In this document: positions 17,948-20,542 of the stretch, one piece after another
How the letters are laid out: every line of letters begins with the position of its first letter
Numbering within the stretch: position 1 is the stretch's first letter
NCBI GenBank assembly: GCA_010909165.1
Contig: MU008159.1
Location: forward strand, 248,001-312,000
Reading direction: 5' to 3'
Origin: Anthoceros angustus
Lineage: Eukaryota > Plantae > Anthocerotophyta
Length of the DNA: 64,000 nt
The notes under the pieces: model-generated
What the model was told of the DNA's origin: nothing
Database searches by the model: none
The model's input: the letters and a program-made list of their open reading frames with translations, nothing else
Translations under genes and position numbers: made by a program

Positions 17948-20542
17948 TCAGGGAAAGGTGTATCCATATAGATGGTTCATCTTCATATAGTTAATCACAT
18001 TGTCTGAGGTCAAGTACTTGACAGACAGCCCTCTCCCGAACAGTCGTCTGTGGACGTCAGGCACAACAGTGAGACGACAATCCATTTCTGTTTCATCGCC
18101 AGATGAGCGAGATGGAACAGGGTCACAGTTCTAGAAGTACCTCACGTTCGTTGAGCTGATGTCATTTGTAACAGCGTCGTCAACAATGAAAATGTTTCTC
18201 TGGATGGCATGAGATGGGTCAGAGATCTTCCTGCTGGCCACACAAGAATAGGGCAATCACGCATGCCACAGGCTATTCAACAGAGGAAAGTGTATTAGAG
18301 ACGTACTTTGTTTCGATAAAGAATGTCGTTCTCGAATACGATTCTTCGTGCATCGTTTCCCAACCTTGACACACAAACAATCCCAAATTCCTGACAGATA
18401 GTTTGGATCTGCAGCACACAGAATTTAGGAGAGGTTTTAGCTGCACCGTGGTCTGCACACCAGAGCAGGAACAAGGGGCTGATTTCTCAGTAATCAGCCT
18501 TTTCTGTTTCCACGAACCTGTTCAGGAATCCAAATGCCTGGAGTGTTAAATGATTCTAGGAGATCAGAACCACATAATAGAAGAATCTTGATTTTATCTG
18601 CAGTCACAGGTAAGAGGAGAAACAAGCTCTCTCAATGGAAGTGCAGAAGCACTACTAGTAGCAGAAAAATGGTGTTGTGGTTGCAGCACAAAGCAGGACG
18701 CTGTTAACCCAGGCGAGTCCAACATGATACCGTCGTTTGGGAGCCCAAGGTTGTTGACAGTTTGTTCGATGCGGCTCATTACTGTCAAGGATCGCTGAGT
18801 GGTTGCCTGTTTGGCCTACTTCAACCATGCACAAGAAGACGTTTTAGTCCAGTGAAGTCATCTTGAAAATGAGTAACTGGAAGATCAACACAACACAGTC
18901 GGACACAGTGGCAGATATTGGAGAAGTGATACTGTCAAGAGATGACACTGGCACTAATGCATGGCAAAGACTTACCTCCCAAGCATCTACCATGATAAAT
19001 GGCGAATCATCAGTTGCTAGCTGGCACATCTTAATCCGATGCTCTGCTAGAGCCAGACCCTGTTCCCCTTGCAAAAAATGTCAGTCCACTCTAGGCATAT
19101 TTCCTCCTGGGTACATGCGCATGATAAGCTACAATCATTCCAGTACCTTTTTGCCATAAGCGTCATTGACTGGAGACATGTAACCGCCCAGCACGTCATA
19201 CCCATTCATCATCAACTCATCTCTTGCAAGCTCTGCGGATTACCACAAGCTTCTCAGTAATTTAACAGTATAAGGAAACCAGGTAGCACAATCACGGTCC
19301 ACAACATACAACACTGTGAGATCGTGAAACCTACCAAACATACGGAGGTGCAAGTAAGTAGGAGGATTGAAGCTTCCAGTAGATACTAAAACTGCTCTAG
19401 GTCTTCGCCTGCAAATGAAATGACCACTTTAAAGCGGCAATGCCACCAGGAAAAGGGCACATCAGACCTCCACCGAACAGAGCAGTAGAAATAGCTGAAG
19501 CTGCATCTTCACTTTTGACTTACTGCTCATGTGCATCCGTCGTAGGGGGTGGATAGCTCAGCTTGCCTGTCGGAAAGGGAACATCTATCACAGCGTCTGC
19601 ATAATACCCCACACACCCTCAGAAACACTCTTCACACCTTAGACGAGTTGGACTGTACACTGTTCGGCAAGCTACATCAGAAAAAGAAAGACAGCCACCT
19701 GAAGCAACACTATTCACACAAATACCATTGCTGCCTGAGGCTCCTGCTGAAGCTGGTCGGCTGTATGGGTCCCAGGATCTACTTTTCCTCGACACAGTCC
19801 TGTCGCCTAGCACTTCTGACATGGACTCAAAAAGTTGCACCCGGAAGGTGGCTGGGAGCTCTTTTGCCTTCGTTTTCTCCCTCTTGGTGACCTCGTCAAG
19901 CTCCCAATAGTTCGGCTGACCCACCTTCTTGTTCCAGTCCGATATTTGCTTATAAGCAGTGGACAGATTTGACCACTTCCTCTCGATCTCCTTTGCCTGC
20001 CTATCTACACCGTAAGTGTGGAGCAGGTTCTGCACCTCTTTCCACTTCTCGTTTGCAGATTTGAAAACATGCTTGACATGCTTCCCTTGCTTCCCAGCCA
20101 TGGCCACCTTCATATGTACCTGGTGATAGGCACTGACCAAAGCATCCATCTCCGCGTCCTGCCACATCTCGGCTCGTTTCTTCTTCCCAATTCCATCTTT
20201 GTCCGGCTTTTCCTCCTTCCCCTCACCTTCGCCTTCGTCGCCAGCTTCCATGTCCACTACAGGTAGCTCCGTACCACCATCTCTTCCTGCCGAGGTGCTG
20301 GCATCTATGTCAGCCCCATCCCCCATTCTGCTAACTCTCCCTAAATCCATGCCAGCCCCAAGTACACTACCCACTCCCACATCCCCTCCGCTGCCCATCA
20401 TGCTGACAGGGGAAACCCCGCCTGCATCCGAAACCAGCAGCTGCCGGTAACCCCCATCAGGTCCCAGCACCTGCCTGTACCCATCATCCCCTTCACCCTC
20501 CCCTTCCACAGCCATGGTGAAGCCGGATGATCTGAGAATCAT
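17948..20542 (-). CDS. NMNAT: Trihelix (Myb/SANT-like) DNA-binding domain fused to nicotinamide/nicotinate mononucleotide adenylyltransferase
   Basis: Exon 1 (ATG at 20542 or 20515 to 19726) encodes WQDAEMDALV...KWKEV...RQAKEIERKWSNL...YWEL. GT-AG intron 19725-19597 joins it in frame to DAVIDVPFPTGKLS. Further intact exons give GSFNPPTYLHLRMF, GGYMSPVNDAYGKK, HRIKMCQLA, DAWE, LLCGSDLLESF, ISSTNVR, GLSVKYLT. Stop at 17948-17950. Confidence 0.88.

What the first reader, a model, noticed from the sequence alone, without database searches (positions are those of the whole stretch)
17948..20542. Trihelix DNA-binding domain fused to NMNAT: a candidate chromatin-targeted NAD+ synthase
Seen: the first NMNAT-like exon (19596-19523, DAVIDVPFPTGKLS) has no in-frame ATG. 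An in-frame TGA lies just upstream (19619-19621), and the nearby ATG is out of frame and stops after four codons. A canonical 129-bp GT-AG intron (19725-19597; AAT G|AC) joins it in frame to an exon encoding an acidic linker, a basic NLS-like KKKR and a full Trp-repeat trihelix/Myb-SANT domain. All NMNAT motifs downstream look intact. Known: plant NMNAT/NaMNAT is normally a stand-alone ~240-aa enzyme, and nuclear NAD+ feeds PARPs and sirtuins. Inference: a protein that tethers NAD+ synthesis to specific DNA sites, or a transcription factor that senses NMN/NAD. Intron retention would give a trihelix-only isoform ending at 19619. I do not know whether this architecture has been described.
Basis: partly seen in the sequence, partly recalled or inferred. 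Interest (0 to 1): 0.88.

Follow-up and report, generated by a model that had tools for sequence, protein, structure and literature searches.

The report
Trihelix DNA-binding domain fused to NMNAT
This plant, probably a hornwort, makes its NAD-synthesising enzyme NMNAT as one protein with a DNA-binding trihelix domain in front; the design is shared by mosses, liverworts, Selaginella and gymnosperms, was lost in flowering plants, and appears in no paper I could search.

Summary
Spliced transcript contigs from the window's own species contain the predicted 19726^19596 junction, a 129-nt GT-AG intron. Three roughly 95%-identical relatives show the same junction. In one relative a single contig runs from the trihelix domain into the NMNAT exons.

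The gene has 10 exons and nine GT-AG introns, with an open frame of 519 aa. It encodes a disordered N-terminus, a KKKR patch, a Myb_DNA-bind_4 (trihelix) domain, a variable linker and a complete NMNAT. NMNAT has no start codon of its own.

The same architecture, with the same phase-1 intron, is annotated in Physcomitrium, Sphagnum, Marchantia, Riccia, Calypogeia, Selaginella, Ginkgo, Taxus and Cryptomeria. Angiosperm NMNATs stand alone and start at a Met just downstream of the junction. In a tree they group with the gymnosperm fusions, so they look like truncated descendants.

No stand-alone bryophyte NMNAT turned up. The trihelix part is under stronger constraint than the enzyme part (pN 0.022 against 0.127).

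So this is the ancestral land-plant NMNAT. It is visible in databases but absent from the papers searched. Whether it tethers NAD+ synthesis to chromatin or acts as a NadR-like sensor is inference only.

The parts
20543..21031 (-). 5' leader, minimum extent. It holds 4 upstream ATGs with short uORFs. It may overlap the 5' end of the divergent neighbour's transcript.
   Evidence: X1 contig record 2 is continuous from 19726 to 21031. uATGs listed.
19726..20542 (-). Exon 1 coding part: 272 codons plus 1 nt. The first in-frame ATG is at 20542. A second ATG at 20515 has the better context (ACCATGG).
   Evidence: Third-position bias of differences.
20174..20185 (-). KKKR basic patch at the N-terminal edge of the trihelix domain (residues 120-123 of the 519-aa protein). 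It looks like a nuclear localisation signal.
   Evidence: K and R are invariant in 27 orthologues.
19892..20167 (-). Trihelix / Myb_DNA-bind_4 domain with three conserved Trp residues.
   Evidence: Pfam PF13837 E 9.2e-10. Profile hit to the GT-1 DNA-binding domain 2JMW/2EBI, E 0.004. AF2 helices 120-142, 154-167 and 174-196 at pLDDT 80-90. VIA-align GT-1 Z 6.4.
19811..19852 (-). Fourth amphipathic helix after the trihelix core (FRVQLFESMSEVLG).
   Evidence: AF2 helix 222-235. F and R invariant.
19597..19725 (-). Intron 1, 129 nt, GT..AG, phase 1. This is the joint between the trihelix exon and the NMNAT exons.
   Evidence: Spliced out in contigs of X1, X2, X7 and X12. The same phase-1 intron occurs in Physcomitrium, Marchantia and Selaginella gene models and in relative L001.
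19524..19596 (-). Exon 2: the NMNAT N-terminus (AVIDVPFPTGKLS...). It has no ATG of its own.
19409..19426 (-). Alternative acceptor at 19426, adding 18 nt in frame. Seen in relatives only.
   Evidence: Joint 19426/19524 in X7 and a loose end in X2.
19335..19408 (-). Exon 3: the GSFNPPTYLH nucleotidyltransferase signature (GxFxPx[T/H]xxH).
19147..19232 (-). Exon 4 (..GGYMSPVNDAYGKK).
   Evidence: Boundary taken with 'cut +1' so that the intron reads GT..AG.
18976..19059 (-). Exon 5 (..SPFIMVDAWE).
18731..18815 (-). Exon 6.
18518..18597 (-). Exon 7 (LLLCGSDLLESF..).
18307..18408 (-). Exon 8.
18141..18199 (-). Exon 9. It begins the ISSTxxR motif (..DISSTNV|R).
17948..18047 (-). Exon 10 coding part, with stop TGA at 17950-17948.
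17600..17947 (-). 3' UTR, minimum extent. The contig runs past the laid stretch.
   Evidence: X1 contig record 1.

Best explanation
One gene gives one spliced mRNA and one protein of about 519 aa.

Shown:
- The domain order is: disordered acidic/Gly-rich N-terminus, KKKR patch, trihelix (Myb_DNA-bind_4) domain with a fourth helix, a variable linker of about 35 aa, and a complete NaMN/NMN adenylyltransferase.
- It is the orthologue of a trihelix-NMNAT family that dates to the base of land plants.
- In bryophyte proteomes this family seems to be the only NMNAT.

Inferred:
- The protein is the organism's housekeeping NMNAT. The trihelix domain and basic patch place and hold it in the nucleus on DNA.
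- The last common step of NAD+ synthesis therefore takes place at chromatin, where PARPs and sirtuins consume NAD+.
- NMNATs are homo-oligomers (my knowledge of the human enzymes). The fusion would therefore present several DNA-binding domains at once.

Angiosperms later dropped the trihelix exon and start translation at a Met just downstream of the old exon junction.
For: Gene structure:
- The junction 19726^19596 is present in a 100%-identical contig of X1 and in three relatives. X12 record 8 spans from the trihelix exon through the 19146-19232 exon (exon 4) and about 58 nt beyond in one contig.
- There are nine GT-AG introns and an open frame of 1560 nt.
- There is no productive ATG for NMNAT alone.
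- The annotated P. patens, Ginkgo and Taxus fusion proteins align colinearly with the window.

Distribution:
- PF13837+PF01467 proteins occur in Physcomitrium (4 loci), Sphagnum, Marchantia, Riccia, Calypogeia, Selaginella, Ginkgo, Taxus and Cryptomeria.
- The phase-1 intron sits at the same place in moss, liverwort and lycophyte and in a 77%-identical relative.

Selection against that relative: pN is 0.022 in the trihelix domain, 0.127 in NMNAT and 0.196 in the N-terminus, with saturated pS.

Enzyme identity:
- Orthologues pass the TIGR00482 equivalog cutoff.
- They hit solved NMNAT structures at E 1e-70 to 1e-39.
- The catalytic motifs are present in the window.

Sole copy: a liverwort NMNAT-domain query finds no named stand-alone bryophyte NMNAT.

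Origin of the angiosperm form:
- Angiosperm Met1 lies directly before D[VI]PLP. Gymnosperm fusions already carry M there.
- Angiosperm NMNATs group with gymnosperm fusions at 99/99 support.
Against: - Nothing here shows DNA binding, nuclear location or enzyme activity.
- The runs are contigs of libraries whose kind is not on record. They give no strand, no expression level and no isoform ratios.
- In the window's own species the exon 2-exon 3 joint is not covered by one contig.
- A transcript starting inside exon 1 and using a late Met could still give an NMNAT without the trihelix core.
- Diphasiastrum and all angiosperms do without the domain, so it is dispensable for catalysis.
- The rest of this genome could not be searched for a second NMNAT.
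Confidence: 0.55

Rival explanations
1. A NadR-like regulator. The protein is chiefly a transcription factor. Occupancy of the NMNAT domain by NAD+, NaMN/NMN or ATP sets the DNA binding of the trihelix domain. This would give feedback control of NAD-pathway or stress genes. Catalysis would be a second role.
For: - There is a bacterial precedent. NadR joins a DNA-binding domain to an NMNAT domain and represses NAD genes when NAD+ is bound (PMC8027369).
- The trihelix domain, and its recognition helix above all, is the most conserved part of the protein. This fits a fixed DNA target.
- Earlier scan notes report other trihelix-enzyme-fold fusions in this genome. I did not check them.
Against: - The catalytic motifs are fully intact and no other NMNAT was seen in bryophytes, so the enzyme role cannot be secondary.
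- No allosteric link between the domains can be seen. The linker is variable in length and sequence.
- NadR's DNA-binding domain and its kinase domain have no counterpart here.
Confidence: 0.2
2. A nuclear address only. The trihelix exon serves as a nuclear import and retention tag, or as a protein-interaction module, for NMNAT. It has no sequence-specific DNA role.
For: - The KKKR patch is conserved.
- Nuclear NMNAT isoforms exist in animals (NMNAT1; PMC12178909).
- The domain was lost without replacement in angiosperms.
Against: An address tag would not need about 50 invariant residues over roughly 450 million years, nor pN 0.022 across 135 codons including the whole third helix. A short NLS would be enough.
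Confidence: 0.17
3. Two functional products. The fused mRNA is a minor read-through form. The cell mainly makes a trihelix-only protein by retaining intron 1 (stop at 19621-19619) and an NMNAT-only protein by internal initiation or cleavage.
For: - One contig of relative X12 runs into intron 1 at 19684.
- A Picea cDNA protein carries the orthologous trihelix domain without NMNAT.
Against: - There is no in-frame ATG for NMNAT in exon 2, exon 3 or intron 1.
- Bryophyte orthologues have V or I, not M, at the angiosperm start position.
- The only X1 contig that covers exon 2 is spliced to exon 1.
- The phase-1 intron is conserved across land plants.
Confidence: 0.06
4. An artefact: a mis-assembly, or a chance open frame across two neighbouring genes.
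For: None found.
Against: Independent transcript contigs from four runs of four studies, a genomic contig of a relative with the same layout, and annotated orthologues in at least 10 genera.
Confidence: 0.02

Closest known systems
Annotated trihelix-NMNAT proteins of other non-flowering land plants, e.g. Physcomitrium patens LOC112290805 (XP_024393283.1), Marchantia polymorpha MARPO_0011s0011 (BBN08274.1) and Selaginella moellendorffii XP_024531671.1
   Same: Same two Pfam domains in the same order, the same phase-1 intron between them, 56-71% identity in the trihelix part and colinear NMNAT exons.
   Different: Variable N-terminal length (425-767 aa in total). This species has one extra codon between the junction and the DVPFP motif. 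None of these proteins has been characterised in the papers I could search.
Stand-alone plant NaMN/NMN adenylyltransferase (the single Arabidopsis gene; Hashida et al. 2007 as cited in PMC12178909)
   Same: Homologous catalytic domain, about 50-60% identical, with the same motifs. It starts at M-DVPLP, directly after the old junction.
   Different: It has no trihelix exon, no N-terminal region and no basic patch. It is 238-260 aa long.
Bacterial NadR (DNA-binding domain + NMNAT + ribosylnicotinamide kinase)
   Same: A DNA-binding domain on the same polypeptide as an NMN adenylyltransferase. It links NAD synthesis to gene control (PMC8027369).
   Different: The DNA-binding domain is an unrelated helix-turn-helix type. 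The plant protein has no kinase domain. The fusions arose independently, and no regulation has been shown for the plant protein.
Trihelix (GT-factor) transcription factors, e.g. Arabidopsis GT-1 (PDB 2JMW, 2EBI)
   Same: The same Pfam family, three conserved Trp residues and a fourth amphipathic helix. GT-1 is the nearest solved relative by profile (E 0.004) and is matched by fold (Z 6.4, rmsd 3.2 over 69 residues).
   Different: This domain forms a tight clade of its own. The next best relatives are only 28-35% identical (MpTRIHELIX20/32/1, Chara). No angiosperm orthologue was seen, and the domain is attached to an enzyme.
Mammalian nuclear NMNAT1 recruited to promoters through PARP-1 or SIRT1 (my own knowledge of the literature, not checked here)
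   Same: The concept of NAD+ being made at chromatin for local consumers.
   Different: Recruitment there is by protein-protein contact. Here it would be by a built-in DNA-binding domain.

Membership tests
Eukaryotic NMNAT (PF01467 / TIGR00482) | N-terminal GxFxPx[T/H]xxH nucleotidyltransferase signature | tested here: met
   Exon 3 encodes GSFNPPTYLH. It is invariant in the fusion alignment.
Eukaryotic NMNAT (PF01467 / TIGR00482) | C-terminal ISSTxxR motif | tested here: met
   Exons 9 and 10 encode DISSTNV|R across the junction.
Eukaryotic NMNAT (PF01467 / TIGR00482) | Full-length profile score above the curated cutoff | tested here: inconclusive
   Single exons score only E 0.03-0.1 for PF01467. 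Orthologues score 137-150 bits against a cutoff of 112.45, and the window aligns colinearly with them over the whole domain.
Eukaryotic NMNAT (PF01467 / TIGR00482) | Adenylyltransferase activity on NaMN/NMN | not testable with these tools
   Needs an enzyme assay.
Trihelix / Myb_DNA-bind_4 (PF13837) | Pfam score above the gathering cutoff | tested here: met
   39.2 bits against 27, E 9.2e-10.
Trihelix / Myb_DNA-bind_4 (PF13837) | Three helices, each with a conserved Trp, plus a fourth amphipathic helix | tested here: met
   W118, W158 and W181 are invariant. AF2 helices 120-142, 154-167, 174-196 and 222-235. GT-1, Zeste and Myb/SANT DNA-binding domains are among the top fold matches, at moderate Z of 5-7.
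Trihelix / Myb_DNA-bind_4 (PF13837) | Sequence-specific DNA binding | not testable with these tools
   Needs EMSA or DAP-seq.
Land-plant trihelix-NMNAT orthogroup | Both domains in one reading frame, joined across a phase-1 intron 3-4 codons before D/E-[VI]-P | tested here: met
NadR | HTH domain + NadR-type NMNAT + ribosylnicotinamide kinase domain | tested here: not met
   Only PF13837 and PF01467 are found in the orthologues, with no kinase domain. This is an analogy, not membership.

The most novel reading that the evidence does not exclude
The ancestral land-plant NMNAT is a DNA-bound enzyme. It either feeds NAD+ to chromatin-bound consumers at defined loci, or, like bacterial NadR, reads the NAD-precursor pool and sets transcription. 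Flowering plants gave up this coupling when they lost the trihelix exon.
Probability: 0.35. Interest if true: 0.85.

Novelty: new variant of a known kind. Interest (0 to 1): 0.64.

Why it matters
NMNAT catalyses the step shared by all routes to NAD+. Where NAD+ is made in plant cells is still open. A 2025 review states that evidence for NAD+ recycling in the Arabidopsis nucleus is not yet available (PMC12178909).

Here the enzyme carries a DNA-binding domain that has been kept for the whole history of land plants. That domain is under tighter constraint than the catalytic domain. This makes a link between NAD+ synthesis and chromatin or transcription directly testable in Marchantia, where only one such gene turned up in these searches, and in Physcomitrium.

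It also gives a dated evolutionary event, the loss of the domain in the angiosperm stem. And it warns that Arabidopsis is not representative of plant NAD biology.

Tried and rejected
- **Papers.** Six searches found nothing that links a trihelix or Myb domain to NMNAT: trihelix+NMNAT, the Pfam names, NMNAT with bryophyte names, trihelix with cytidylyl/adenylyltransferase, NMNAT+Myb+plant, and PDB codes 9RPK/9RPM.
- **Foldseek.** The exon-1 model gave no match against PDB at E <= 0.001, only weak Myb-like telomere-binding domains. VIA-align gave moderate Z values that are consistent but not decisive.
- **At3g10030 lead.** I recalled that Arabidopsis At3g10030, a SIP1-clade trihelix (PMC6686422), carries an enzyme-like part. 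I asked whether this domain is its relative. The 102 second-tier relatives carry only Myb-type domains plus a few transposase or other domains, and no enzyme. I dropped the lead.
- **Selaginella.** Its old trihelix-only model (310 aa) ends in read-through of the intron. The RefSeq model of the same cluster (489 aa) is the fusion.
- **Diphasiastrum.** There is no trihelix exon within 10 kb upstream of its NMNAT. It has its own 20-aa first exon.
- **The 252-aa ORF at 20642-21400 (minus strand).** It overlies the leader and has no Pfam match, so I treat it as chance.
- **Joined protein.** Exons were searched by reference, and full-length properties were tested on annotated orthologues.
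Full report
**The sequence**

On the minus strand, an ORF from 20581 to 19619 holds in-frame ATGs at 20542 and 20515. It encodes the following:
- a Gly/Asp/Glu-rich region;
- a KKKR patch;
- a Myb_DNA-bind_4 domain (Pfam E 9.2e-10, 39.2 bits against a cutoff of 27).

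- in-frame TGA at 19621-19619;
- an out-of-frame ATG that stops after four codons;
- a GT at 19725 and an AG ending at 19597;
- an exon from 19596 that encodes AVIDVPFPTGKLS with no ATG of its own.

The only correction is that this exon ends at 19524, not 19523.

**Transcript evidence**

The one sequencing-run search returned 23 runs. Their library kind is not on record. I laid four of them on 17600-21200.

Run X1 matches the window without a single difference and holds three contigs. One joins 19524-19596 directly to 19726-21031, which is the predicted 129-nt GT..AG intron removed. A second contig joins the remaining NMNAT exons from 19408 down to the 3' UTR.

Runs X2, X7 and X12 come from other studies and carry other organism labels. 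They are about 95% identical to the window and show the same joint. In X12 a single 913-nt contig runs from 20346 inside the trihelix exon, across the junction, through the 19146-19232 exon and a little beyond.

Because the contigs lack all nine introns, they must derive from RNA. There are three limits:
- contigs give no strand, no expression level and no isoform ratios;
- in X1 itself the exon 2-exon 3 joint falls between two contigs;
- a contig in X12 that enters intron 1 at 19684 may be unspliced RNA.

An alternative acceptor at 19426 adds 18 nt in frame. It is seen only in the relatives.

**Gene model**

With the joints, there are ten exons and nine GT-AG introns of 87-160 nt. The frame is open for 1560 nt, giving 519 aa from 20542 or 510 aa from 20515, which has the stronger context. 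Two joints were read with the tool's 'cut +1' to place GT..AG.

I checked the frame exon by exon.

The NMNAT signatures are present: GSFNPPTYLH in exon 3 and ISSTNVR across exons 9 and 10.

**Selection**

Among the relatives, 13 of the 14 listed differences inside exon 1 are at third codon positions. The 12 differences upstream of the ATG show no periodicity.

A genomic contig of a more distant relative (L001, 77% nucleotide identity in exon 1) has all ten exons in the same order and the same in-frame junction. Against it, synonymous sites are saturated. The non-synonymous fractions are:

| Region | pN |
|---|---|
| Trihelix domain (135 codons) | 0.022 |
| NMNAT exons | 0.127 |
| N-terminal region | 0.196 |

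The DNA-binding part is therefore the most constrained part of the protein.

**Relatives elsewhere**

Searching with the exon-1 ORF found proteins with both PF13837 and PF01467 in Physcomitrium, Sphagnum, Ginkgo and Taxus. A profile of eight fusions added Cryptomeria, Marchantia paleacea, Riccia, Calypogeia and Sphagnum fallax. All angiosperm hits, including Amborella and Nymphaea, are stand-alone proteins of 238-260 aa.

Cluster look-ups added the following:
- Marchantia polymorpha BBN08274.1, named NMNAT by its source, 706 aa;
- the 489-aa RefSeq model of Selaginella;
- four loci in Physcomitrium.

The annotated moss, Ginkgo and Taxus proteins align colinearly with the window.

In the moss, liverwort and Selaginella gene models, the intron between the two parts is phase 1 and lies three codons before the D/E-[VI]-P motif. 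In this window and in L001 it lies four codons before. This points to one ancient fusion.

**How flowering plants got their short enzyme**

Angiosperm NMNATs begin with Met directly before D[VI]PLP. That is 3-4 codons downstream of the old exon junction. Gymnosperm fusions already carry a Met at that place, whereas bryophytes, Selaginella and this window have V or I.

I built a tree of the catalytic domain with 26 rows. Four were left out: the window itself, the Taxus partial protein, the second Ginkgo protein, and one row without the motif. The tree places the angiosperm clade (100/100) together with the gymnosperm fusions in a seed-plant group (99/99). The short form therefore looks like a truncation of the fused gene.

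The lycophyte Diphasiastrum has a stand-alone NMNAT with a new 20-aa first exon and no trihelix exon within 10 kb upstream. The alga Klebsormidium also has a stand-alone form.

I searched with the liverwort catalytic domain among shorter proteins (252-aa query; the tool admits candidates of 0.55-1.75 times that length). No named stand-alone NMNAT from any bryophyte turned up. This is a limited test, because the tool works by shared words and lists only 120 hits. It suggests the fusion is their only NMNAT.

**The trihelix domain**

An exhaustive HMMER scan of 1.84 billion representatives gave 11 clusters at E <= 1e-46, all orthologues. There is then a gap down to 28-35% identity, where MpTRIHELIX20/32/1 and a Chara protein appear. 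No angiosperm orthologue was seen. The 102 weaker relatives are ordinary Myb-type proteins.

A profile of 27 orthologues hits the solved GT-1 DNA-binding domain at E 0.004.

The AlphaFold model shows a disordered region from residue 1 to about 115. It then has three helices at pLDDT 80-90, plus a fourth helix. Its best fold matches are DNA-binding Myb/SANT-type domains, including GT-1. Their Z values of 5-7 are moderate and only corroborate.

About 50 residues are invariant across the 27 sequences, including nearly the whole third helix. The linker to NMNAT varies in length and sequence.

**The enzyme part**

Orthologues pass the TIGR00482 equivalog cutoff. They also match solved NMNAT structures, including human NMNAT1 and NMNAT3, at E 1e-70 to 1e-39.

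**Organism and surroundings**

The window's protein is 56-71% identical to the moss, liverwort and Selaginella orthologues in the trihelix region. It belongs to none of those groups. Earlier scan notes call this genome very probably a hornwort. I did not test that directly.

A Y-family DNA polymerase gene (Pfam IMS) starts head to head at 21122 on the plus strand. No convincing gene lies just downstream.

Earlier notes also list other trihelix-enzyme-fold fusions in this genome. I did not check them.

**What it probably does**

- **Shown:** one transcript, one frame, two intact domains, deep conservation, and strong constraint on the DNA-binding part.
- **Inferred:** the protein is the housekeeping NMNAT and is held in the nucleus on DNA.

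My odds for the role of the trihelix domain are:

| Reading | Odds |
|---|---|
| Chromatin-placed NAD+ synthesis | about 0.55 |
| NadR-like sensing regulator (precedent in PMC8027369) | about 0.2 |
| Mere nuclear address | about 0.17 |
| Two separate products | about 0.06 |
| Artefact | about 0.02 |

**Novelty**

The architecture can be seen in public automatic annotation, so the gene here is a further member of an existing but uncharacterised orthogroup. No paper in the searchable library links a trihelix or Myb domain to NMNAT. A 2025 review of plant NAD metabolism treats the plant enzyme as the single stand-alone Arabidopsis gene.

I rate it a new variant of a known kind.

Noticed in passing
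window 21122-21514 (+) and onward: A Y-family DNA polymerase gene (Pfam IMS, E 3e-9) starts head to head with the trihelix-NMNAT gene. RNA contigs from the two genes meet around 21012-21031, so the two may share a bidirectional promoter or have overlapping 5' ends.
   Followed up: partly
window 19409-19426 (-): An alternative 3' splice site adds 18 nt (6 codons, in frame) before exon 3. It was seen in contigs of relatives X2 and X7 but not in the window's own run.
   Followed up: partly
protein P0009 (Picea sitchensis D5A8W4, cDNA-derived): The spruce orthologue of this trihelix domain is followed by a hAT-transposase dimerisation domain (PF05699, E 1.5e-13) instead of NMNAT. It may be an alternative transcript that captures a transposon-derived exon.
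   Followed up: no
L002 10001-10384 (Diphasiastrum complanatum): The stand-alone NMNAT of this lycophyte has its own short first exon encoding 20 residues before the DVPLP motif. Together with the angiosperm loss, it points to at least two separate losses of the trihelix part.
   Followed up: partly
L001 2652-5519 (relative, Logan contig): In the 77%-identical relative, a 955-aa PPR/E-motif gene lies about 480 nt upstream of the trihelix-NMNAT start. In the window the polymerase gene sits there instead, so the local gene order differs.
   Followed up: no
window 20543-21031 (-): The long 5' leader holds four upstream ATGs. One opens a 63-codon uORF in the main frame that ends before the start codon. 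Translational control is possible.
   Followed up: no
same genome, other windows (earlier notes s1-300104, s1-257984, s1-694378): Earlier notes report trihelix domains fused to a dead HpcH/HpaI aldolase and to an adenylosuccinate-lyase fold in this genome. Trihelix-enzyme fusions may be a recurring theme here.
   Followed up: no
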